Source of the DNA: Hyaloraphidium curvatum SAG 235-1
Taxonomy: Eukaryota; Fungi; Monoblepharomycota
Reading direction: 5' to 3'
DNA length: 64,000 nt
Assembly: GCA_025558095.1 (NCBI GenBank)
Contig: JAIVFI010000005.1
Location: 744,001-808,000 of the forward strand
Shown here piece after piece: positions 11,010 to 32,463 of this stretch. The position numbers and the translations under genes were made by a program. The notes under the pieces were generated by a model. That model searched no databases, was not told the DNA's origin, and saw only the letters and a program-made list of their open reading frames with translations. The first letter of the stretch is position 1. Each line of letters begins with the position of its first letter.

Positions 11010-11134
11010 CTCGCGCGATGCAGTAGGGGACTAAGCGCAGGATAGGAGAAGTCAGAACTGGTCAGGGTCCTGGGTGATGGTGTATCAGTCCCGGCCAGGG
11101 TCCTGCAACTGGTCGCCAGCTTGCGAACGCAAAG

Positions 11135-12882
11135 ATGGCGGCAACCGGAGTCGCTACCGCCGTCAATGCTGCTGCCACCGTGCTCACTTTCGCTTCGGGC
11201 GAAGATGCGATGCGCGGCGCAGGGGGGAACGTCGCCGGCGCCGTGGCGGAACTGTTCGACCGGGGGCAGGCGCTCTGGGCCAAGGCCAAGACCCTCAAGA
11301 AACTCGCGCCGGCGGTCAACGAGCTCCTTAAGGCGGACACGGATCTCGGGCAAAAGCTCAGCCTGGCAAAAGACATCGTCGGCGACGTCGTCGCGGTCGG
11401 GGCCGCTGTGAAAGATATATTGTCCAAGCCGTTGGCCGACGGATCTTTCCTGGGCGCGGGCCTCGGCGCCGCTGCTTCGGAGCTCGTTGCAAACGGTGCC
11501 GCGGTGATTGGCAGCGTTGGCAGCGCTGCTGCCGCTGTGCCCCTCGGACTCGGGGTTGCCAACGCATTCCTTAGTGCCGTCTCCGTGGGAATCGGCGTTC
11601 GCACGCTGCAGAAGCTGGGCAAAGTCGCCGAAGATGTCAAGCAGATCTATGGCCGCGCGGAGGACATCGACAAGAAGCTCGACAGGACAAACAGCTCCCT
11701 CGATCTGGCGCATACGAAACTAGATAGCATTCTCAACCTGCAGCAGCGGGCGAACGCGGGCATAGGTGGGCACGCATTTCGTGCAGTGTTCTCTGGATGG
11801 GAGTTGACCAGGCGTCTGAAAGGCAAGCTCATCCGGGGCCAGGGCGAGTTGATGGATGCTCTCAAGAGACTGCCGGCCGAGGCGGCGCAAGCGCAGGCAC
11901 TGGTGCAGCTGACCATAAACGTGCCCGCGCTAGCGATGAGCCGCAGCCAGTACTTTGCGCTGGTTAATGAGAAGGGCACCGACGCGCCGGATGTGGCCAC
12001 AATGAAGGTGCATCTACTGCGTGACGCGAACCTGATAGTCGCTACCGCCATCGAGCTGGCCCGGGCCGCCGTTGCACCTGGGCAGGCCTCGGATCCCGAA
12101 CGCCTGTGGAATCTGTTCTGCACGCGTGCGTTTGCCCTGCGGTGCAAGGCGGAGGTGGAGGCTGAGCAGCGCAACGGCCTCCTGTTGGTGCACAAGGAAA
12201 TCTCTGACCTGGCTAAAGAAATCAAGGAGACAGGAGCAAGTCTCTGCAGGGGCATGACGGTCAAACAGCTCGTCGCGGGGGAGTGGGACCTCGTCCTCAA
12301 CTATGCTGTTTTGTACCGGATGGTGCTCCTCGGCGTGGCCGGTGACTACATCGACTTCGAAACGGCCGACGGCAAGACAGATGAGGTCGAAAAGAAAGAG
12401 GTCGACAAGGTAAGCCCGTGGGGTGTCGTGGGAGGGAGCGCGACACACTCACGGCGCGCCAGGTGGTTTCGGATCTAGTGTCCTGCCTCGCGGACGACGT
12501 CAACCTCCACATGTCCAACCTCGCGGCGGCCTTTGGGACTGAAAGGGTGTGCTGGGTCCCCCTCCGCTCGCCCGAAGACATCAAGTGGTTCCGAAAGGCT
12601 GCGCTGCCCGAGCACCGTGACAAGAACCCCGTCGCCGTCAACCTGGCGGCGATCGCCGTCTCCCTCGGCGGGCAGGGCGTGGCACAGCGCGTAGACGAGG
12701 GCAAGGCCAAGACGCTCCTCGCTGCCGCGCTTCCCGACTTCCACGAGAACCTCGCCCGGGCGGTGCGCCTCCTGTTCGACCTCGACGAGAAGGCCGCGAT
12801 CGGCATCGAGAGGCGTGGTGTGGACGCGGCAGGCTTCTGCTTTGCGCAGGATCTGGGCGCGGGGACCCGTGCGCTTCGTTAA
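11135..12882 (+). CDS. Helical protein with a Gly/Ala-rich hydrophobic segment followed by a coiled coil (possibly membrane-inserting); intron ~12410-12463
   Basis: ORF 11135-12409 is spliced (GTAAGC...CCAG) to VVSDLVSCL...; the segment FLGAGLGAAASELVANGAAVIGSVGSAAAAVPLGLGVANAFLSAVSVGIGV is followed by KLGKVAEDVKQIYGRAEDIDKKLD. Confidence 0.75.
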
Positions 12883-23223: not shown

Positions 23224-24193
23224 ATGGCCGCTGCCAACCAGATCCAGAATGAGACCACCGTCGAGGGTCGCCCGGTGGAGTTATTGCTGGGCGATGGCCG
23301 GACGCTGCTCCAGCAGCTGCAGGACTGGGCCGACGCGCAACTCGGCAGCAGGGAGTTCGTCTTCCTCATCCCGGACGGCGATGCACGCGCTTCTGTTGTC
23401 ACCGATGGCACCCCGGTGTCGGACGCCATCGGCAAGAAGGTCCACGCGGTCGTCTCGGCGAGCCTTCACATCGCGGTCGTCAAAGATGTTGCCACCCTCA
23501 AGAAGGGCCTGGCCACACTCCAGGAACAGTTTGCTGGCTTCAAAGATAAGGCTCTGGCCGTCGAAAACCTCACGATCACCGGCAAGATCACTGCTCAGGA
23601 GCTGCAAGTCAACGGAGCTACCGAGATCAGCGGCGTTGTGACACTTTCCAACGCGACCTCGCTGATCGCACGAGGCAACGTTGAATGCAAAGGGAAGCTG
23701 GTGGCAGAGGGGACTACCGAGGCGAGTATGTTCTGCATCAGTCTGCGGCTCAATTGATCTCTTCGAGTTCCAGATCAAGTCCCTCGTAGTCGGACCGGAC
23801 AACAACAACCAAAGCCGTGTCCCGGTCCCGGTAGCAGTCATCAACGGGCTGCTCGATGCCGCAAAGGCGACTGTCAACGGGGATATCGGTGTCACAGGCA
23901 AGGCAAAGCTGGGCACGGTCGAAGTCGAGGAGACGGCTACATTCAAGAAGGGGGTGGAAGTCCAATCTGGCGGCCTCAAAGTAACCAAGTGCGACATCCA
24001 AGTGAATGAGGGCAGCGTCAACATCAACGGCAGGGCACGCGTTTTGGGCGGCCTCGAGGCCTCTAATGGCATCGAGATCCATAGTGGCAACAAAGACGGA
24101 TGGGGCCTGCTCATACACAGTGACAACTTGGCTGTTGCCAGAGGCACAATAAAGGCCAGAGACGGTGTTTATCATGGTGATCGAAGGCTTTAG
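23224..24193 (+). CDS. Fibre-like protein A: small N-terminal domain, coiled coil and beta-helix repeats (predicted GC-AG intron 23722-23773)
   Basis: Paralog of 30964-32463 (near-identical N-terminal ~130 aa); repeats of the V.G.L.V/I.V..G type (LTITGKITAQELQVNG, ATVNGDIGVTG, VEVQSGGLKV). Confidence 0.7.
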
Positions 24194-24287
24194 GAATGTG
24201 GAGCGGTGTGGAATAGCTGCATATCAGTGTGAAGAACAGGATCTATCGGATTGAAATTTACTATCCAAACACCGTGCTCAAATCGGT

Positions 24288-24745
24288 CTAAAGAAAGAAA
24301 AAAGCCCGCAACACTCGCCGCCGCCGCCGCCACCCTGATATCCCGCACGACGCTCCGCGCCTCCACCCCCACCTCGCCTGCTCCTCTACGAACGCCTCCG
24401 CCTCGCCCAGCTCCACCCCCCTCGCATCCCTCGCCAACCACACCACAAACTCCTCCGGGCTCGGCCCGCCCATCCCCAGCCTCGCGCGGGGGCGGTGCAT
24501 CAGGCCGTAGTAGAAGCTCTGCACGCTGCAGTCACCCAGGGCGCCGTACAGCCGCGGCAGGCGGACCAGGGCAAAGGGGACGTCCTCGCTGCCGCGGAGG
24601 GCGTGCTTGCAGCAGCGGATGGCGGCGAGGAGGCGGTCGTTGAGGGCGGCGGGGATCGGGGTCGTTGGGGCGCGGTAGCCGTACGGGGCGGGCGGCGGAG
24701 CGGAGTGCGAGGCCAGGGATTCGTAGGCCGAGGCGAGGGCGGCTC
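24288..24745 (-). pseudogene. Probable gene remnant or last exon of an unidentified gene
   Basis: Stop-free frame AALASAYESLASH...ALNDRLLAAIRCCKHALRG...VQSFYYGLM...EEFVVWLARDARG with coding-like composition; no clear start was found. Confidence 0.35.
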
Positions 24746-25244
24746 ACATCCACGAGTCGTGGGCCCGCGAGAAGCGGAGAGGGATCAGCGATCGGCGTCA
24801 GGTCTGAGGCGCCGACCCTTGATCGCCGCCGCCGCTGGTAGCAATAAACCGAATAGGACGGCATCCGCAGCACTTCGTACGCCTGCTCCAGCCCATACCA
24901 CGACCACAGCTCTTTCGGATTGATGTCAACGGCCTGCGGTACGCCTCCATCGCGGCCATGTTTGTCACCTCCACGTTACTCGTGGCCTATGAGCATCCAC
25001 GCGGCGGAGTAGTTGCAGTCAGGCGCAGGGCCCGAAGGAAGTGCATGTCGGCCTTTTCGTGCTCGGTGCGGAGGGAGAAATAGTCGCCTGCAGAACGGAG
25101 CGTGAGCGATGCGTGGATGCAAGTTCGGGTGACGACTGACCGACGACGACAACATTTCCCGCCTCCACCGGTCCACGCCCATGCACTAGTGCGCCCATAA
25201 ACCCAGCTTGGCCTCTTCTCCATAAAAGAGAGCGCACTGGCGTA

Positions 25245-25845
25245 GCCGTCCTCCTTGCTCTGGTGCGCGACAACCAGCCGCGCTCAACATCCGGTAGAGG
25301 GATGCGCAGACGTGAGAGCCGCCGCCGCGTCGGTGCGAAATGCGAGACAATGGAAGGCGCCAGGCACCTCGTAGGGCAGTTCGCCCCCGTCGGCTAGTTC
25401 GAGTGCGCCGTCGGTGGACGCGCGGACAGGGTTCACGCCCCCGTCAAAGTCGCAGAATCGTCCGCGTCCGCAGGGAATGGCACAGTCGCGGCCCTAGCCA
25501 CCGCACAATCCGCTGCTTGAGCAGATCCGCCGGAAATGCGGCGCCGAGGGGTCGTTGGTCTCGACAGCATGGCCGCCGCCTCACAAGCGCTCGTCGGGGG
25601 GCAGGCGTGCAGCATTCGCGCTGCCGCGGGGTGGGGTTCGATGTCGAGCAGCGCCGGCTGCACTCGATGCCGTAGCCCGCGCGCTCTGAGCGGCCCAAGT
25701 CGCGTCGACCACGGGAGGCGGCGGAACTGGACGCGGAAGAGCTCTCCACGCGGCGATCTCGTCGCGCGCCATCGCGGTGTCCCAGCGCGGCCCCTCCTGC
25801 TGTGGACCGTGCGCGACACGCCTCACGCGCAACGCGGGTGAATGG
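25245..25845 (-). pseudogene. Frameshifted copy of the 5' part of the AAA ATPase gene (30120-30824)
   Basis: Pieces in three frames match the AAA N-terminus: QEGPRWDTAMARDE vs QEGPRWGTAMANDE, QPALLDIEPHPAA vs QPALLRRAPHPAA, FPADLLKQRIVR vs FPADLLEMRIVR, TVPFPA, and HQSKED vs HQSKEE. The ATG is missing. Confidence 0.85.
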
Positions 25846-26100
25846 GAGACCCGCAGAATGTTTCCAACGCAAGACGTGGACCTGACTGGCGCATGAGACC
25901 GCGTTTGGACCGCGTTGAGACGCCTTTCAACGGACGCGGCGACGACGCCATCCCGGCACCGCACGACCGCACGCGCCGCCGGATCCGGCCTCCGTCTGGC
26001 GCCGCCGAAGTCTCCCGAGCTCGCCGCCTAAGCAGCTGCCGGCCCCGCCGGACTCGGTCGCCTGAGGCGCAGAACTCCGTCCCCAGCCGTACTTTTCGCC

Positions 26101-27458
26101 ATGCCCGACCTCAGGGACCTGCTCGAGGACCAGAAGCTCCTGCAGAGCGAGCTCAAGGACCTGCAGGCCTGCCGCAACGCGGTGGACGAGGAGCTGGCGA
26201 ACGCCAGTGACGCGCTGGACAAGCTCCTGGGGGCGCTGGGAGGGAAGACGGACGAGCTGCTGCAGCAGCTCATCGGACGCGATCTGCTCGGCAATGAGCT
26301 GCTGCAGCTCAGGGAAGTCGAGCGCATGGTCACCGGAGCGATCGACGATGCGCTGAAGGAGCTGGCCGACGTCGCCAAGAACGAGGCCAAAGCGCTTCTG
26401 AACAAGGAAGGAGTGCAGAACATCCTGTCCTTCCTCCAAAAGGGGCAGGCCGCGCTCGAGCAAGCCACAAAAGCCGTATCATCGGCGGTGTCGGCCGCGA
26501 CGGCGGCTATCGAGAAGTTCAAGTCCCTCCTTTCCCGTGCCGAACAGGGCGTGGATGAGATAAAGAACGAGAAGGACGACGTGCTCAAGGCCATCATGGC
26601 CATCGAGCTGGTTCTGGAGCTTGTCGAGAAGCTGCTCGACGCGCTCATTGCTTTGATCGCCGCGCTTCTTGTGGCCCTCGCCGGTGCGTTCCGAAAACCA
26701 GCTGTAGCTGCCTAGACAACTGATTCGCCTTCCCCTGCAGCTGCTTCCTTTCTCTTCGGCATCGGCGTCGCGCCCATCGTCGCGGCCCTAAAGAAAGCTT
26801 CTGCTACCCTCCTTCTGACGAAGGAGAAGGTCGGACTGCTCCGCCTCAAGATTCGCCTCATGCGCGTGGCGTTCACGGGCCTGACACAGGGCTGGCAGAA
26901 GGCGATCGAGCTGGCCAAGGGGCTGACCAAAGACCTTGCAATGAAGGTGGCCGACGAGATAGGGCTCGGCGACGAGCTGAAGAAGCTGCAGAAGGACATA
27001 ACGGACAAGGTCCAAGAGATTGCGAAGCAGACTGGGATAATGGACGTCGTCAACTCAACCCTGGACGGGCTTAACGGACTAAAGAAAGGGTTGGAAGCCA
27101 CGGTGGCTGCCAGTAACGAGAACCTTGCAGGAATCATCGCGGATGTTTCAAGGACGGTGGGATGCTTACCGCAGGTTCTCATAATCGTTTCCAATGCTGA
27201 TTTTGCATTCTGTAGGCGGGAAACCTTGACAAGGCAAAAGAAACTGTCGGCCAATTAACGGGTCAAATTGGAGCCATCACTGACGCCAAGGGCGTTCTGG
27301 ACAGCATCATTAGCGAAGCCGGCAAACGCAAGTCGCAGTTAGACAAGCAGATCGAAGATGTTACCAAGCGCAGTGAGGCGCTCGAGTCGCAAATCGCACA
27401 GGAGGAGGCGAAGATGAATGCCAACGTGGTGAACGTGGCCTCGAACATCAACCGTTGA
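26101..27458 (+). CDS. All-helical coiled-coil protein (413 aa) with a central hydrophobic hairpin, ClyA/HBL-like architecture; introns 26684-26740 and 27157-27215
   Basis: The spliced ORF is continuous; long amphipathic heptads flank LLDALIALIAALLVALAAASFLFGIGVAPIVAAL; there is no signal peptide. Confidence 0.8.
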
Positions 27459-27502
27459 TTGCCGCGTAATGTTCTGAATGTGGTTCAAAAGTGCGTTTTG
27501 AA

Positions 27503-30500
27503 TTACTTCGATGCCTTTTGTACAATCTGTTTCTTGGCCATGTTCGTCAACGCATTCCAGTTCACATCTGCAGGTGATCCTCGAGTGCTGTGGGGAGCCG
27601 GTATTTCCCCCTTCTCCGACCATGCCTTCCCACAGCACATCCATTTGGCCTCTACAGGTTCTTTCATCTCTTTCAGCCGGTCGAGAACATCGACGAAATT
27701 GCAGATTTCCGGCACTGGAGCAGGGGCATCGGTTTCTTGGTTGCCGTTGCTAGCACTTGCTTTTGCAAGGGCAAGGAACTGTGACGCGTGTCGTCCGCAT
27801 TCCGTTGGCCCATTGTCCTCCTCTTTGTAGTTTTGGAAGCAGAAGATGCATTGGGTCTCTGTTGTCCTCTGTCGGCCTTCCTCTTGCACTCTTCGGTCGT
27901 CCTCGGTATCCCATCTGAGTTCCTCCTTCAGTCGCTGTGTCACGTAAGGGTGCCCGGAGACTGCAACCACGCAGCAACGCGGCCAGTTGCTTTCTGGTTC
28001 CGTTTCCAACTCGCCAGCAAGCTGGATCTTTGCAACAATGGCCTCGAACAACTGCTGGCGTAGGAGTTTGTACGTCACGCTCTCTGTTGAAGTGCTCTTA
28101 ACCTGGTTGCGCGCCGAGGATTCGAGCTCCTTAGCCCGGCCCGATACGTCCTTCGTAGGAGAAACCACCGAGTCGCAATCGATGATGAGCAGCGCCTTCT
28201 TGTACTGCAATGCCTCGTCCCACACGCGCTTCAGCTCATGCAGTGCAGCGGACTCCTCCGTAGCACGCTTCGCAAGGAGAACATCGAGGTTGAAAATGGC
28301 GACGTGGTCCAGCTCCTTGCGCACCGCAAGCTTGATCAGAGTACTGTACGCGGCCTTCTTTGCCGTCTGTCCTGCGGCCACGGGGTCCTCCACAAGGCGC
28401 ACAAGAGGCCGGATCCTCGCTTCGGCCTCCTCAAGCTCCCGCTGCCAATTTGCCTTGATATTTGCACTGCATGGGAAGTTTGGGCCGAGGTAGCTGGATA
28501 CCGTCCCGCCCACAGCCCTATAGAGGGCTTTGTCAAGCTCTGAATCACGTGCTCTTGCCGAGTGCACGCCATTCTCTCCAGCAAAAGCTTGTTGAGCGCC
28601 TGGCCACGTGCAATTGTCCCTGTCCCCAGAGTGCCCTTGGATTAGTGCCGTCAGTGTGCGGTGCACCCAGAGCAGGTGCTCTGTGCTCCGGCTCCAGCCA
28701 GCAGCACCAAGCTCAGGTCGGACCTTGGAGAGGTACCTCACGGACGTCTCCGCTAGCTCCGCAATCACCTGCTTGGCGCCGTTCCCGAAGGGCCTTTCAG
28801 GTTCTCCTGCCGGCAGCTGCGGGTCCGTGGAGGGCGAGGGCGGAGGCTTGCGTGAATGGGCGTCCGCAGACTGCCCTGCAGGATCCGGCGGTGCAGTCCC
28901 GGCCTCTGGTACGGCGGCTCCGGCCTGAGGTGCCGCCCCGGCCTGCGGCGTCGTCCCCACAATGTCCGTGACCAGGTTGCCGCCGACGTCGATGCCCTCC
29001 TCTCGGCAGAAGTCCCTCACGAGCTTCTTCACGCGGCCCGCCTTGCCCTCCGCCGTGCGGAAGACGACGTCGAGCATCAGATAACGCAGCAGCTTCTCCA
29101 TTGCAGCGTGGGAGAAGCCGAGGGTCCATTCCACGAGACTCGTGCCCAGCCCAGATAACAGTATCTCACCAGGACGAAGTGGGTCCTGTCTGAACAAATG
29201 ATCGAGGGCGGTTTGGTCTGCGCGCGGCACTTTGAAGACCTCAGGTCGCGTGCGAGCCATGTGAATCCATTCTTGTCGGTGCGCGGCCGACGGGAGACCA
29301 ACGAAGATCTTGACGTGCATGCGGCGGAGGAAAGCCGGGTCTAGTACGTCGAATCGGTTGGTGGAACCGAACAGCACCAGGTTCTTGGTTTTGTCCTTGA
29401 TCCCAGCAATGAGGCTGAGGAGCGAGTTGAGCCCCGTGGCGCGGCCCTCGCGCCCCGAGCTCGAGCTCCTGTCCATCGCCATCGTGTCGATCTCGTCGAT
29501 CGCGGCGACGCAGACGGCCCAGGGCAAGCGCTCCGCCCGGTCGGCGAGCTCGTTGAACATGCGCTTGTCGTCGCCTACGATGCCTTGGTCGAAGTCGGCC
29601 GAGGACATGGGTTCCACGATCAGGAAAACTCCCAGGGCTGCGCACAGTCGCTCCACGAGCATCGTCTTGCCCGTGCCCGGGGGACCCCAGAGGACGATTC
29701 CGCGAGGGATGCCGGGGGTGGTGTAAGGCCGCAGAGGGAGCTCAAACTCGTCCCGCAACTGCTCGGCACCAATCAGGTCGCTCAACCCAACGGACAAAGC
29801 CAGGTCCACGATGTCCTGGTGGCAGTAGGCCATGTTCGCGTACGCCGTTTTGTTGTCGACGCCTTCCGAATGATAGGCGAGGTAGCGCATGAAGAGCCTG
29901 CCGGGAAGGCAAGAAGAGGGCGTTAACACTCGGTGGGTCGAGATGCGCGGAGATGACGCCCAACCACGCGGTTGCCATGTCCTTGGCCTTCTTTGCATCG
30001 ACGTCGGGTGGGACCGACGACGTCTGGGGCACCGAGGTGAAATCGATATCGACAGAATTGCCTTGCTTCAGCGCAAACAGGTCCGACGGCAGCACCTTAT
30101 AGGTGCGTCCAGGCAGGAGCACCTCCTCTTTGGATTGATGCGCGACGACCAGCGGCGAAAGTTTGATATCGGGGAACAGGACCGGCCTAGCAGCGAGGCG
30201 CCGGACGCCGTCCTGCACAGCGGCGCGCTCGCTCGTGCGCAGGGCGGAGAGCGCCCAACGCGCGGCATCGGTGAGAGGAACTAGTTGCAGGTAAGCGCCG
30301 CTGCTTGGGACGCCGGCGTCCGCGTCGGCGCCCTCGAGCACGCCTGCGATGAAGGCACTGGCGCGGTTGACGTCCGCAGGGAGAGCGTCTTTGTCGTCCC
30401 CTTCCGCTGGGAACGGTACGGTGCACAGCTGACCTTGTCGCCGCACGATGCGCATCTCCAGCAGATCGGCCGGGAAAGAATCGCCGAAGGGGTCGTTGCC

Positions 30501-30824
30501 CTCGGCCAGTCGCCGAGCGAACGCCTCCTCGGCCCGCGAGCGCTTCTCAACGCCCAAAGAGCGCAGGACCCGCACGGCGGCGGGGTGCGGCGCGCGGCGA
30601 AGCAGCGCCGGCTGCAGTCTGATGCCGAAGCCAGCGGCGGGCGCGTGCTGCGAGACCCACACCGCGTCGACGTGCGAAGGCCGAGGTCCCGCATCGACCG
30701 CGCTGAACAGCGCATCGCACGCCTCGGCCTCGTCGTTCGCCATCGCGGTGCCCCAGCGCGGCCCCTCCTGCCGTGGACCGCGCGCAACTTCACGCGCAAC
30801 GCGGGCGAATGGGTGGGGCGCCAT
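27503..30824 (-). CDS. NSF/CDC48-like AAA+ ATPase with a novel N-terminus, a degenerate second AAA module and a C-terminal Cys/His Zn finger; intron 29898-29964
   Basis: Walker A GPPGTGKT, Walker B AAIDEID, SRH STNR..LDPAFLRR; D2-like LKRVWDEALQYKKALLIIDCDSVV; C-terminal CIFC..Y...DNGPTECGRH...WMCCG. Confidence 0.9.
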
Positions 30825-30963
30825 CTTTCTCGTCACAGGGAGAAGAACGCGTTGAGACTCGCCGCGTGGATTGCGCGGACCCTGACTGGTTGAGATAGAA
30901 CTCAAAACGCGGCCGACGCCATCGACGTTGTCGACGAGAGCAACAATCTCCTCCCTGCAGACC

Positions 30964-32463
30964 ATGCCCGCTGCCAACCAGAATGAGGCCACCGTCGAAG
31001 GCCGCCAGGTGCAGCTAGCCCTGGGCGGTGACTCGACACTGCTCCAGCAGCTGCGGGACTTGGCCGGCAAGGAGTTCGTCTTCCTCATTCCGGATGGCGA
31101 CGGACGCGCAATCATGGTCACCGATGGCACCCCGGTGTCGGACGCCATCGGCAAGGAGGTCCACGCGGTCGTCGCGGCCGGCGCACACAAGACGCTCGCG
31201 AAGGAAGTCGACGACCTCAAGAAGAATCTGAAAGCGCTCCAGGATCAGTTTACTGCCATCAAGGATAAAGCTCTGACCGTGGAAAACCTCACGATAACCG
31301 GCAAGATCATTGCTCAGGAGCTGAAAGTCCACGGAGCTACCGAGTTCCAGGACAGCGTTAAGGTCACGCACGGGGAGCACGGCCTGAACGTGTCCGGCCC
31401 ACTCGTCTGTAACGGCGTCACTTGCAACGGAAATGTGGTCGTTCAAGAAGGCGCCACGCTCCAGGTTGGTCGCTCACGTCCCGGCATCGCGATCGCGAAT
31501 GACGACCTTCTGCCCTCGCAGGTGAAGGGCCAGCTCACGGTCGAAGGCGAAAGAGGCAAGGCAAATATCAAGGCTCTCGATGTCGGCAAGATCGCCCAGA
31601 CGGGCTACAATGATGCTACGGCGGAGCTCAGGGGCCTGACCATCAGGGAAACCGGCATCAAGGTTGAGAGAGGCCTGGTTGAGGTCCAGAACGACGGCAT
31701 CACGGTCAAAGAAGGCGGACTGGAGGTTAAAGCTGGTCTCCTGCGCGCCAGGGACGGCATCAAGGCGACTTCGACGCTGACGAGGGACCGCCCTGGTGTG
31801 GAGATCAGCAACGGGCTCGTCTCAAGCGACGGAAATGTGGTCGTTCAAGAAGGCGCCACGCTCCAGGTTGGTCGCTCACATCCCGGCATCGCGATCGCGA
31901 ATGCCGACCTTCTGCCCTCGCAGGTGAAGGGCCAGCTCACGGTCGAAGGCGAAAGAGGCAAGGCAAATATCAAGGCTCTCAATGTCGGCAAGATCGCCCA
32001 GACGGGCTACAACGATGCTTCGGCGGAGCTCAGGGGCCTAACCGTGAAGGAAACCGGGATTAAGGTCGAGAAGGGGGGCGTGGAGGTCGAGAAGGGCGGC
32101 GTGGTGGTCCAGGATGGCCGTTTGCTTGCCAAGAACGGCATCACGGTCGAGAAGGACGGGCTGGAGGTTAAAGCCGGCCCCCTGTTCGCCAACCACGGCA
32201 TCCATACGACTTCGATCATGTCGAGCGGTGGCGCCGTCCTCGGCGACTCTGTCAATATCCGGAACTTCCGATTCAAGGCAGTCGATGACTTTACGCTTCA
32301 TCTGGAACACAACAACGGGGACACGAACATGGTGCGGTTCAGCCTGCACCACCCGGACCGCATCCGGATCTACAACAACCACGGCAACTTCTTCTTTTTC
32401 AACCACGACAGCCGCTTCGGGGTAGGGATGAAGGGAGGAGCTGTCCACTATGGCAAAACATAA
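30964..32463 (+). CDS. Fibre-like protein B: N-terminal domain, coiled coil, extended beta-helix repeats and a distinct C-terminal tip; in-frame introns 31465-31521 and 31867-31923
   Basis: Repeats GIKVERGLVEVQNDGITVKEGGLEVKAG and GVEVEKGGVVVQDG; two 57-nt GTTGG...GCAG segments look like introns. Confidence 0.8.
   Translation: MPAANQNEATVEGRQVQLALGGDSTLLQQLRDLAGKEFVFLIPDGDGRAIMVTDGTPVSDAIGKEVHAVVAAGAHKTLAKEVDDLKKNLKALQDQFTAIKDKALTVENLTITGKIIAQELKVHGATEFQDSVKVTHGEHGLNVSGPLVCNGVTCNGNVVVQEGATLQVGRSRPGIAIANDDLLPSQVKGQLTVEGERGKANIKALDVGKIAQTGYNDATAELRGLTIRETGIKVERGLVEVQNDGITVKEGGLEVKAGLLRARDGIKATSTLTRDRPGVEISNGLVSSDGNVVVQEGATLQVGRSHPGIAIANADLLPSQVKGQLTVEGERGKANIKALNVGKIAQTGYNDASAELRGLTVKETGIKVEKGGVEVEKGGVVVQDGRLLAKNGITVEKDGLEVKAGPLFANHGIHTTSIMSSGGAVLGDSVNIRNFRFKAVDDFTLHLEHNNGDTNMVRFSLHHPDRIRIYNNHGNFFFFNHDSRFGVGMKGGAVHYGKT
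31429..32180 (+). repeat. Intragenic tandem duplication with a 402-nt period (copies start at 31429 and 31831), including an intron
   Basis: GGAAATGTGGTCGTTCAAGAAGGCGCCACGCTCCAGGTTGGTCGCTCAC... occurs at both positions and is near-identical for ~210 nt before diverging. Confidence 0.95.

What the first reader, a model, noticed from the sequence alone, without database searches (positions are those of the whole stretch)
23224..32463. Candidate novel system: NSF-like AAA ATPase + Ubl-headed beta-helix fibre proteins + ClyA/HBL-like helical protein
Seen: a 9-kb, more A/T-rich island between dcd and NELF-B arranged as fibre A(+), remnant(-), AAA pseudogene(-), helical protein(+), AAA-AAA-Zn finger(-), fibre B(+). 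All intact genes carry introns, and the cluster shows duplication, decay and repeat expansion typical of conflict loci. The two fibres share a conserved head and coiled coil but have unrelated C-terminal tips, like receptor-binding fibres with swapped specificity. Inference: the fibre is a trimeric sensor or spike, the AAA is an unfoldase that engages the fibre's head, and the helical protein is a membrane-permeabilising effector. I know of no described system with this combination.
Basis: partly seen in the sequence, partly recalled or inferred. Interest (0 to 1): 0.88.

Follow-up and report, generated by a model that had tools for sequence, protein, structure and literature searches.

The report
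AAA ATPase with coiled-coil hairpin partner
In the chytrid fungus Hyaloraphidium curvatum, an uncharacterised AAA+ ATPase sits next to a long coiled-coil protein with a greasy tip; the same two genes lie side by side in other chytrids, amoebae, bdelloid rotifers and many uncultured protists, whereas the two 'fibre' genes beside them were found only in this genome.

Summary
The three-part "system" is only partly supported.

**Holds up:** the AAA ATPase (27503-30824, minus strand) and the helical protein (26101-27458, plus strand) are one copy of a conserved two-gene module.
- The ATPase belongs to a large orphan family. It has an orphan N-domain, a catalytically intact classical AAA domain, a P-loop-less second domain and a split Cys/His zinc module.
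- At 14 loci this family lies directly beside a long coiled-coil protein. About nine of those partners have a central hydrophobic Pro/Gly tip.
- The loci include two more pairs in this genome, two other chytrids, Naegleria, a bdelloid rotifer and metagenomic protists.

**Does not hold up:**
- The fibre genes have no detectable relatives anywhere. They are absent from every other copy of the module.
- ClyA/HBL membership of the helical protein was tested and is unsupported or inconclusive.
- The ATPase is no closer to NSF than to Cdc48/Afg2/Rix7.
- The second "AAA" rests on a Walker-B-like motif only.
- The ubiquitin-like head is untested at useful confidence.

**Most likely mechanism (inferred):** the ATPase remodels or extracts its coiled-coil hairpin partner at a membrane.

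An earlier scan note (s1-701892) describes a like pair on another piece of this genome.

The parts
23224..24193 (+). Fibre A gene (305 aa; exons 23224-23721 and 23774-24193; predicted 52-nt GC-AG intron). It has a small alpha/beta head, one long helix and Gly/Val-rich 6-residue repeats. It lacks the C-terminal ~70-aa end region of fibre B.
   Evidence: Matches public model P0002. Head is 82% nt identical to fibre B. Alignment A4. Repeat periodicity. Intron read.
25249..25846 (-). Decayed remnant of the 5' exon (N-domain) of a former AAA gene copy. Its 5' end faces the helical gene start 255 bp away. That is the head-to-head arrangement seen for intact pairs elsewhere.
   Evidence: blastn 25458-25846 against 30394-30813, 68% over 424 nt, E 2e-36. 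tblastn of the N-domain exon, E 1.8e-5. Repeat families D5 and D6.
26101..27458 (+). Coiled-coil hairpin partner gene (~414 aa; exons 26101-26683, 26741-27156 and 27216-27458). It is all-helical, with a central hydrophobic Pro/Gly segment.
   Evidence: Reading frames and GT-AG boundaries. Exon 1 matches the L003 partner at E 8e-5, and at 1.7e-12 in a small database; exon 2 aligns colinearly at E 0.04. Single copy in the genome.
26578..26800 (+). Hydrophobic tip of the partner. It spans intron 1: about 35 hydrophobic residues, then Gly/Pro, then a second hydrophobic stretch.
   Evidence: Hydropathy maximum of 2.2 over 30 residues. The equivalent segment forms the turn of a long antiparallel helical hairpin in the model of the L003 homologue.
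27503..30824 (-). AAA ATPase gene (1084 aa; exon 1 30824-29965, intron 29964-29898, exon 2 29897-27503).
   Evidence: 831-aa ORF plus upstream exon. Pfam AAA, E 5e-24. Closest relative is P0003, E 1e-83.
29965..30824 (-). Orphan N-domain exon of the AAA gene (286 aa).
   Evidence: No Pfam family for it or for the N-domain of P0003.
29297..29698 (-). Active classical AAA domain (D1): Walker A 29663-29686, pore loop with Ile in place of the usual aromatic 29558-29587, Walker B 29486-29506, sensor 1 29357-29368, arginine pair 29318-29335.
   Evidence: Motif coordinates. These positions are invariant across the family alignment.
27788..28402 (-). Family-specific second domain (D2-like). It has a Walker-B-like strand at 28169-28192 and no P-loop.
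   Evidence: A profile of this region finds 79 of the 283 fetched proteins. Comparison with D1 aligns only the Walker-B region, E 0.94.
27590..27850 (-). Split Cys/His zinc module: CxxC..CxxH at 27788-27850 and WxCC..H at 27590-27643. Possibly CHORD-like.
   Evidence: Conserved in most family members. Sub-threshold hits only: RAR1 CHORD E 0.06, Pfam CHORD E 0.013 in 1 of 14 members and TSTD2_N E 8e-4.
30825..30963 (.). 139-bp head-to-head spacer between the AAA start codon and the fibre B start codon.
   Evidence: Read directly from the sequence.
30964..32463 (+). Fibre B gene (461 aa spliced, 499 aa if the two in-frame 57-nt segments 31465-31521 and 31867-31923 are kept). It has a 402-nt internal tandem duplication (31416-31715 and 31818-32117) and a non-repeat C-terminal ~70 aa.
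   Evidence: Public model P0001. Repeat family D1. Intron boundaries. Low-confidence model with short strands. 6-7-residue periodicity, z 4-5.

Best explanation
The core of the locus is one copy of a conserved eukaryotic two-gene module.

**Gene 1** is an orphan-family AAA+ ATPase. It has:
- an N-domain of unknown fold;
- one catalytically complete classical AAA domain, whose pore loop carries Ile instead of an aromatic residue;
- a P-loop-less second domain;
- a split Cys/His zinc module.

**Gene 2** is a 400-1000-aa protein that most likely folds into a long antiparallel coiled-coil hairpin. In the chytrids and several protists its turn is a 30-45-residue hydrophobic Pro/Gly segment, suited to dipping into a membrane.

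**Most likely mechanism (inferred by analogy, not shown):**
- The ATPase forms a hexamer.
- It uses ATP to assemble, disassemble or extract its coiled-coil partner at a membrane.
- The analogies are NSF on SNARE bundles, Vps4 on ESCRT-III hairpins and PspF with PspA.

**History of this locus:**
- The old head-to-head ATPase copy has decayed to a 5' remnant.
- A second ATPase copy now sits tail-to-tail with the partner.
- That copy shares a 139-bp divergent spacer with fibre B.

The two fibre genes are paralogues with no detectable relatives outside this genome. They have a small head, one helix and beta-solenoid-like repeats, and they lie beside the module. Whether they work with it is open.
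For: **A large, distinct ATPase family**
- The ATPase has intact Walker A, Walker B, sensor 1 and an arginine pair. All are invariant across the family.
- A profile of the whole protein finds many 750-1250-aa relatives.
- 79 of the fetched proteins carry the family-specific D2 region, and most also carry the split zinc motif.
- The family separates from a Cdc48 outgroup on a long, fully supported branch.
- Members come from Naegleria, Willaertia, Physarum, Polyrhizophydium, Nowakowskiella, Adineta, Rotaria and many metagenomes. All are unnamed.

**Adjacency of a long coiled-coil gene**

| Locus | Arrangement |
|---|---|
| Window | Partner beside the ATPase |
| Same genome, contig C4, pair a | ATPase near 361 kb, partner 363191-365668 |
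| Same genome, contig C4, pair b | ATPase 377380-381701, partner 383210-385753 |
| L003 | Partner ends 30 bp before the called ATPase start |
| Nowakowskiella (L022) | Adjacent |
| Polyrhizophydium (L024) | Adjacent |
| L025 and L026 | Head-to-head, 92-97 bp apart |
| Naegleria (L021) | Adjacent |
| L023 | Adjacent |
| L082, L087, L088 | Adjacent |
| Adineta (L105) | Adjacent |

**Partner features**
- Nine partners have a central hydrophobic Pro/Gly segment, near the midpoint wherever the full length is known.
- The model of the L003 partner is a long antiparallel helical hairpin whose turn is that segment. Local pLDDT there is 80-90; the mean is 56.
- The window partner and the L003 partner are homologous by sequence.

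**Fibres**
- They are single-genome orphans.
- tblastn found no fibre homologue near the C4 pairs.
Against: - No direct evidence of interaction. The one complex prediction (ATPase N-domain with the partner) gave no answer.
- No expression data could be obtained.
- Apart from window versus L003, the partners are grouped by architecture and position, not by significant sequence similarity. The best other pairs reach E 0.002-0.005, and coiled coils are prone to spurious matches.
- In Naegleria, the rotifer and some metagenomic loci the partner's centre is Ala-rich or not hydrophobic. A membrane role may therefore not be general.
- A few short contigs show no partner: L075, L027 and L086.
- The partner model has low overall confidence.
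- The Ile pore loop resembles the non-threading D1 ring of p97, so classical substrate threading is not assured.
Confidence: 0.6

Rival explanations
1. The fibres are trimeric sensors or spikes. The ATPase is an unfoldase that engages their ubiquitin-like head. The helical protein is a ClyA/HBL-type pore-forming effector.
For: - Fibre B and the ATPase share a 139-bp head-to-head spacer.
- The fibre head's predicted secondary structure has the order and spacing of a beta-grasp.
- The fibre body has a 6-7-residue Gly/hydrophobic periodicity.
- Language-model look-alikes are phage fibre or baseplate clusters at 0.84-0.88, which is below the trust level.
- The cluster shows duplication, decay and repeat expansion.
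- The fibre heads diverge at Ka/Ks 0.65.
- The helical protein has a hydrophobic hairpin.
Against: - The fibres have no relatives anywhere. None was found by tblastn near the two other pairs in the same genome or in four foreign loci.
- There is no Pfam or PHROG family for the fibres.
- The fibre model has pLDDT 44.5.
- ClyA-family matches are not distinguishable from generic coiled coils.
- No ClyA or HBL Pfam hit.
Confidence: 0.12
2. The pair is a mobile, horizontally spread defence or cell-death cassette. The coiled-coil protein is a membrane-damaging executioner and the ATPase is its guard or trigger.
For: - The distribution is patchy across supergroups and includes bdelloid rotifers.
- Local duplications and a decayed copy are present.
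- In the tree the window ATPase groups with an unknown 44%-GC organism, not with the other chytrids. Two chytrid sequences group with Naegleria.
- Neighbours at other loci include an HSP70-TIR-NB-ARC-TPR gene, a ZNFX1-like helicase, PARP, NADAR and Ank genes, a SecA_DEAD/TPR giant and a RING ORF beside C4 pair a.
Against: - No known effector or sensor domain is present in either protein.
- PADLOC hits are only generic AAA and generic coiled coil.
- No family member was found in the viral contigs.
- The tree is a quick one with weak deep support.
- The neighbour associations are anecdotal (four or five loci) and were not tested against a background.
Confidence: 0.2
3. The genes are unrelated neighbours. 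The adjacency of an ATPase and a coiled-coil gene is coincidental, and the helical protein is an ordinary structural coiled coil.
For: - Coiled-coil proteins are common.
- Sequence similarity between partners of different lineages is mostly insignificant.
- The complex prediction gave no support.
Against: - There are 14 loci with a long coiled-coil gene as immediate neighbour, many head-to-head with spacers under 260 bp.
- They include three independent pairs in one genome and loci from distant supergroups.
- If a few percent of genes encode such proteins, the chance expectation is well under one locus. This is my estimate, not a computed background.
Confidence: 0.05

Closest known systems
Cdc48/p97, Afg2/SPATA5, Rix7/NVL, archaeal VAT (classical-clade type II AAA+ unfoldases)
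   Same: - These are the best sequence matches of the ATPase domain, E 5e-44 to 1e-40 with the family profile.
- Walker A and B, sensor 1 and the arginine pair are intact.
- The layout of an N-terminal domain followed by two alpha/beta modules is similar.
- An aliphatic pore-loop residue also occurs in the p97 D1 ring (from my own knowledge).
   Different: - The N-domain has no CDC48_N match.
- The second module has no P-loop and is not detectably an AAA domain.
- There is a C-terminal split zinc module.
- The family sits on a long separate branch.
- A dedicated neighbouring partner gene is present.
NSF with SNARE bundles
   Same: It is an ATPase of the same clade. Conceptually, a hexamer takes apart a membrane-anchored coiled-coil assembly.
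   Different: - NSF scores lower than Cdc48-type proteins, E 6e-34.
- NSF D2 binds ATP, whereas there is no P-loop here.
- No SNAP-like adaptor is present.
- The partner is a single long hairpin with a central greasy turn, not a tail-anchored SNARE.
Vps4 with ESCRT-III; PspF with PspA/Vipp1
   Same: - In both, an AAA+ ATPase is paired with a helical-hairpin protein that binds or remodels membranes.
- CHMP4B, Snf7, PspA and Vipp1 hairpins appear among the structural matches of the partner model at Z 10.5-10.8.
   Different: - Those matches do not stand out from generic hairpins.
- The hairpin here is about twice as long.
- Its greasy part lies at the turn.
- The ATPase is not of the Vps4 or bEBP type.
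ClyA-family alpha-pore-forming toxins (ClyA, Hbl/Nhe, XaxAB/YaxAB, AhlB/SmhB, MakA) and the T3SS translocator IpaB
   Same: They are elongated helical proteins with a hydrophobic hairpin that inserts into membranes. ClyA pore Z 11.4, IpaB Z 12.3.
   Different: - No sequence-family hit.
- Foldseek E 0.06-0.17 with TM <= 0.25.
- The protein is eukaryotic and intron-bearing, with no N-terminal signal sequence visible in the reading.
- It is always paired with an ATPase.
Phage tail fibres, bactofilin and other beta-solenoid proteins (for the fibre genes)
   Same: - A helix is followed by short strands at a 6-7-residue period.
- Weak language-model look-alikes are phage fibre or baseplate clusters.
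- Bactofilin hit at E 0.068.
   Different: - No significant family hit in Pfam or PHROGs.
- The genes are eukaryotic and carry predicted introns.
- No confident fold was obtained.
CHORD domain (RAR1, CHP1/melusin)
   Same: - The Cys/His spacing of the two halves, CxxC..CxxH and WxCC..H, is similar.
- Sub-threshold hits to RAR1 CHORD (E 0.06) and Pfam CHORD (E 0.013 in one member).
- The WxCC resemblance comes from my memory of the CHORD consensus.
   Different: - The two halves are split by a variable 40-80-residue insert.
- The second half alone does not find CHORD structures.
- Every hit is below the family thresholds.

Membership tests
Classical AAA+ ATPase (Pfam PF00004) | Walker A GxxGxGK[ST], Walker B hhhhDE, sensor-1 Asn, and arginine finger(s) in the second region of homology | tested here: met
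   Pfam AAA E 5e-24, above the cut-off. The motifs were located and are invariant in the family alignments.
NSF | Closest similarity to NSF; NSF-type N-domain; nucleotide-binding D2 | tested here: not met
   NSF scores E 6e-34, behind Afg2, Rix7, VAT and Cdc48 at E-44 to E-40. The N-domain has no family hit. D2 has no P-loop.
Cdc48/p97-type double-ring AAA | CDC48_N double-psi barrel N-domain and two complete AAA domains | tested here: not met
   No CDC48_N hit. Only one AAA domain is found by Pfam. The D2 profile against the D1 profile gives E 0.94. All NCBIfam scores are far below their cut-offs.
ClyA/Hbl/Nhe alpha-pore-forming toxins | Sequence-family membership (Pfam HBL, ClyA or related) | tested here: not met
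   No such hit at E <= 0.1 for the window exons or at E <= 1 for the L003 homologue.
ClyA/Hbl/Nhe alpha-pore-forming toxins | Fold: helical bundle tail plus a head or foot with a hydrophobic hairpin, standing out in a structure search | tested here: inconclusive
   The model of the homologue has pLDDT 56. MakA, SmhB, AhlB and XaxB reach E 0.06-0.17 with TM <= 0.25. ClyA reaches Z 11.4 inside a flat list of generic hairpins. The window protein itself could not be folded, because a spliced model must not be joined.
Ubiquitin-like beta-grasp (fibre head) | beta-beta-alpha-beta-beta-(3-10)-beta fold, or a family hit | tested here: inconclusive
   No Pfam hit. The predicted secondary structure has the right order and spacing, but pLDDT is about 50.
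Beta-helix or phage-type fibre (fibre body) | Regular solenoid repeats, a trimeric assembly, or a family hit | tested here: inconclusive
   6-7-residue periodicity at z 4-5 and short regular strands. No Pfam or PHROG hit. Trimer formation was not tested.
CHORD zinc domain | Pfam CHORD above its cut-off; six Cys and two His binding two zinc ions | tested here: inconclusive
   Only sub-threshold hits. The second half alone finds no CHORD structure. Cys/His positions are conserved.
Orphan family defined here: AAA + D2-like + split zinc module, with a coiled-coil neighbour | D2-region profile hit plus the CxxC..CxxH and WxCC..H motifs | tested here: met
   The window protein is a row of alignments A5 and A8 and carries both motifs. 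79 fetched proteins share the D2 region.
Orphan family defined here: AAA + D2-like + split zinc module, with a coiled-coil neighbour | A long coiled-coil gene as immediate neighbour | tested here: met
   Window gene 26101-27458, and 13 further loci.

The most novel reading that the evidence does not exclude
The AAA/zinc-module ATPase and its membrane-tipped coiled-coil partner form a eukaryotic two-gene cell-death or defence cassette. It moves between distant lineages (chytrids, heteroloboseans, amoebozoans, bdelloid rotifers). The ATPase holds or triggers a membrane-inserting executioner. In Hyaloraphidium the cassette has recruited rapidly evolving fibre-like proteins as sensors or baits, through a shared divergent promoter.
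Probability: 0.18. Interest if true: 0.9.

Novelty: new variant of a known kind. Interest (0 to 1): 0.66.

Why it matters
Conserved gene pairs that stay adjacent across eukaryotic supergroups are rare. When they occur they usually mark tight functional coupling or shared mobility.

Here an unnamed AAA+ family has members in Naegleria, Physarum, chytrids, bdelloid rotifers and many environmental protists. It turns out to have a fixed partner, which gives a concrete hypothesis for what the ATPase acts on.

If the partner is a membrane-inserting hairpin controlled by an unfoldase, this would be a new membrane-remodelling or cell-death module. It could be tested in organisms that can already be cultured. 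The finding also gives a defined family (D2 profile plus split zinc motif) for annotating dozens of 'hypothetical' proteins.

The fibre genes are true orphans and are of interest mainly as a possible lineage-specific add-on.

Tried and rejected
- **Word-indexed protein search with the L003 partner:** nothing found, not even itself. Coiled-coil words probably swamped the candidate list.
- **ESM Atlas look-alikes:** the partner scored 0.79 and the fibre 0.88. Both are below the trust level, so they are leads only.
- **PDB sequence searches for fibre and partner:** chance-level hits only.
- **PADLOC, NCBIfam and PHROGs:** only generic AAA and generic coiled-coil matches, and nothing for the fibres.
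- **Viral contigs:** only generic ATPase-domain hits. No N-domain, D2, partner or fibre was found, so a giant-virus origin has no support.
- **Complex prediction of the ATPase N-domain with the partner:** no answer. It counts neither for nor against binding.
- **Second AAA domain:** the profile comparison aligns only the Walker-B region at E 0.94, and the PDB search gives E 1.3 to Afg2.
- **CHORD idea for the zinc module:** sub-threshold only.
- **The search for related loci with two alignments:** they were too divergent to give search patterns.
- **Literature searches:** nothing found on this family or pair.
- **Spliced models:** those of the window's helical and AAA proteins were never joined. 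Exons were searched apart by reference, so the window's own helical protein was not folded or searched as a whole.
- **'Remnant(-)' at 24194-25248:** looked for and not found.

Full report
**Organism and observation**

The window is contig C5:744001-808000 of a 31.9-Mb assembly. The two fibre proteins match public models of Hyaloraphidium curvatum, a monoblepharid chytrid.

| Feature | Coordinates | Notes |
|---|---|---|
| Fibre A | 23224-24193 (+) | 305 aa, two exons |
| AAA 5' remnant | 25249-25846 (-) | 68% over 424 nt to 30394-30813 |
| Helical gene | 26101-27458 (+) | Three exons; GT-AG introns of 57 and 59 nt |
| AAA gene | 27503-30824 (-) | 1084 aa; one 67-nt intron |
| Fibre B | 30964-32463 (+) | ATG 139 bp from the AAA start codon, head-to-head |

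- The fibre heads are 82% identical in DNA. Fibre B holds a 402-nt tandem duplication.
- The island is only slightly GC-poorer than its surroundings, 0.617 against 0.652.
- The additional 'remnant' between fibre A and the AAA remnant could not be found.
All introns are therefore models.

**The ATPase**

- Pfam finds one AAA domain.
- Walker A, Walker B, sensor 1 and an arginine pair are intact. They are invariant across relatives.
- The first pore loop reads Gly-Ile-Val-Gly, without the usual aromatic residue. This is a family trait.
- With a family profile, the best solved relatives are Afg2, Rix7, VAT and Cdc48. NSF ranks lower.
- The N-domain matches no family.
- After the ATPase domain comes a conserved region with a Walker-B-like strand but no P-loop. 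A profile comparison with D1 aligns just that strand at E 0.94. 'Double AAA' is therefore not established.
- The C-terminus carries a split Cys/His module, CxxC..CxxH then WxCC..H. It has only sub-threshold resemblance to CHORD and TSTD2_N.

**A large unnamed family**

- A whole-library profile search gave many 750-1250-aa relatives.
- Named sources are Naegleria lovaniensis, Willaertia magna, Physarum polycephalum, the chytrids Polyrhizophydium stewartii and Nowakowskiella, and the bdelloid rotifers Adineta and Rotaria. All are 'hypothetical'.
- In a quick maximum-likelihood tree the family is separated from a Cdc48 outgroup by a long, fully supported branch.
- In the same tree the window protein groups with P0003 (from a 44%-GC Logan contig) and a metagenomic protein. 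The other two chytrids group with Naegleria.

**The key result: a conserved neighbour**

The closest relative, P0003, lies 30 bp downstream of a 435-aa all-helical protein. That protein is homologous to the window's helical gene and has the same central hydrophobic segment:
- exon 1, E 8e-5 pairwise and 1.7e-12 in a small database;
- exon 2, colinear at E 0.04.

The same arrangement then turned up repeatedly.

| Locus | What lies beside the ATPase |
|---|---|
| Same genome, contig C4 (two pairs) | Head-to-head coiled-coil gene with a hydrophobic centre |
| Nowakowskiella and Polyrhizophydium | Coiled-coil gene with a hydrophobic centre |
| L025 and L026 | 528- and 534-aa partners, head-to-head, 92-97 bp away |
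| Naegleria and a related contig (L023) | Long coiled-coil genes |
| Metagenomic loci L082, L087, L088 | Long coiled-coil genes |
| Adineta ricciae (L105) | 978-aa coiled-coil gene 126 bp downstream |

- That makes 14 loci with a long coiled-coil gene as immediate neighbour. About nine of them have a clearly hydrophobic Pro/Gly centre.
- Three short contigs (L075, L027, L086) show no partner.
- Outside the window-L003 pair, sequence similarity between partners is weak. The class therefore rests on architecture and position.

**What the partner looks like**

- The single-sequence model of the L003 partner has a mean pLDDT of 56. It reaches 80-90 around the centre.
- The model is a long antiparallel helical hairpin (helices 90-217 and 225-321) plus a third helix. 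The hydrophobic segment forms the turn.
- Foldseek and an exhaustive VIA search return chemoreceptor, SMC/Rad50, IpaB, ESCRT-III/PspA/Vipp1 and ClyA-type hairpins at similar, non-discriminating scores.
- ClyA/HBL membership is thus unsupported by sequence and inconclusive by fold.

**The fibres**

- They have no relatives in 5.8 billion proteins. Only two loci exist in the genome. tblastn found none near the C4 pairs.
- Heads (residues 1-127) are about 75% identical, with Ka/Ks 0.65.
- Downstream, both are Gly/Val-rich with a 6-7-residue period but barely align. Fibre B has an extra ~70-aa non-repeat end.
- The two-sequence model has pLDDT 44.5. Its secondary structure fits a small beta-grasp-like head, one helix and many short strands.
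- No Pfam or PHROG family fits.
- Their only link to the module is position, chiefly the 139-bp divergent spacer with the ATPase.

**History of the locus (inferred)**

- In most other loci the ATPase and its partner are head-to-head.
- In the window, that position upstream of the helical gene is occupied by the decayed ATPase 5' remnant, 255 bp from the start codon.
- The intact ATPase lies tail-to-tail with the partner and head-to-head with fibre B.
- The simplest reading is an ancestral head-to-head pair, duplication of the ATPase, and loss of most of the old copy.

**Mechanism**

- Shown: an ATP-competent classical AAA domain, a family-specific domain set, and conserved adjacency to a long coiled-coil protein with a central, often hydrophobic, turn.
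- Inferred: the ATPase hexamer acts on that partner at a membrane by assembly, disassembly or extraction. NSF, Vps4 and PspF do this on their helical clients.
- The one complex prediction gave no answer.
- A defence or cell-death reading is possible. The evidence is patchy distribution, local duplication and decay, and suggestive neighbours such as NLR-like, ZNFX1-like, PARP/NADAR and RING genes. It remains anecdotal.
- No viral link was found, and no paper on the family.

- Spliced window proteins were never joined. Exons were searched apart by reference, and the intronless L003 homologues served for folding.
- An earlier scan note (s1-701892) describes a head-to-head AAA and membrane-tipped coiled-coil pair on another piece of this genome. 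I reached the C4 pairs independently before reading it. I confirmed a RING ORF beside one of them.

Noticed in passing
window 31465-31521 and 31867-31923: The two predicted 57-nt in-frame introns of fibre B differ at only 2 of 57 positions. The exonic codons of the same tandem repeat have pS 0.21. The 'introns' are thus the best-conserved part of the repeat. They may be coding, retained, or homogenised by gene conversion.
   Followed up: partly
window 11078-12475 (+): A 466-aa open frame encodes a helical protein with a Gly/Ala-rich hydrophobic segment. It has no Pfam family. It lies 12 kb upstream of the cluster, and its relation to the cluster is unknown.
   Followed up: partly
G000:C4:359846-365668 and C4:377380-385753 (L028, L029): Two further head-to-head ATPase/coiled-coil-hairpin pairs lie about 20 kb apart in the same genome. 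The partner paralogues share a near-identical hydrophobic tip. A RING-finger ORF lies at C4:357687-358718 (-).
   Followed up: partly
L022 1-4980; L025 5769-11027; L026 5390-10928; L105 14473-19151: Neighbours of the module in other organisms include an HSP70-TIR-NB-ARC-TPR gene, a ZNFX1-like helicase, Ank, NADAR and PARP genes, and a 3228-aa SecA_DEAD/TPR protein. This hints at conflict-type neighbourhoods but was not tested against a background.
   Followed up: no
L003 14-523 (+) and 4958-5416 (-): Two partial ORFs flank the pair on the Logan contig. Neither has a Pfam or PHROG family, and neither resembles the fibres. The contig is intron-free with very tight gene spacing, and its source organism is unknown.
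   Followed up: partly
The dCTP-deaminase call is supported by a DCD hit (E 1.5e-7) on one exon.
   Followed up: partly
window 29558-29587 (-): The first pore loop has Ile where classical AAA unfoldases have Tyr, Trp or Phe. One subfamily of relatives (Gly-Ile-Val-Gly-Asp-Ser-Glu) shares this, while the rotifer-type subfamily has Leu or Tyr.
   Followed up: partly
window 23722-23773: The public model of fibre A uses a 52-nt GC-AG intron. A canonical GTATGT lies 4 nt downstream but would break the frame.
   Followed up: no
contig of P0133 (JGI 3300059473) and L075: Some protist contigs carry two family ATPases in tandem.
   Followed up: no
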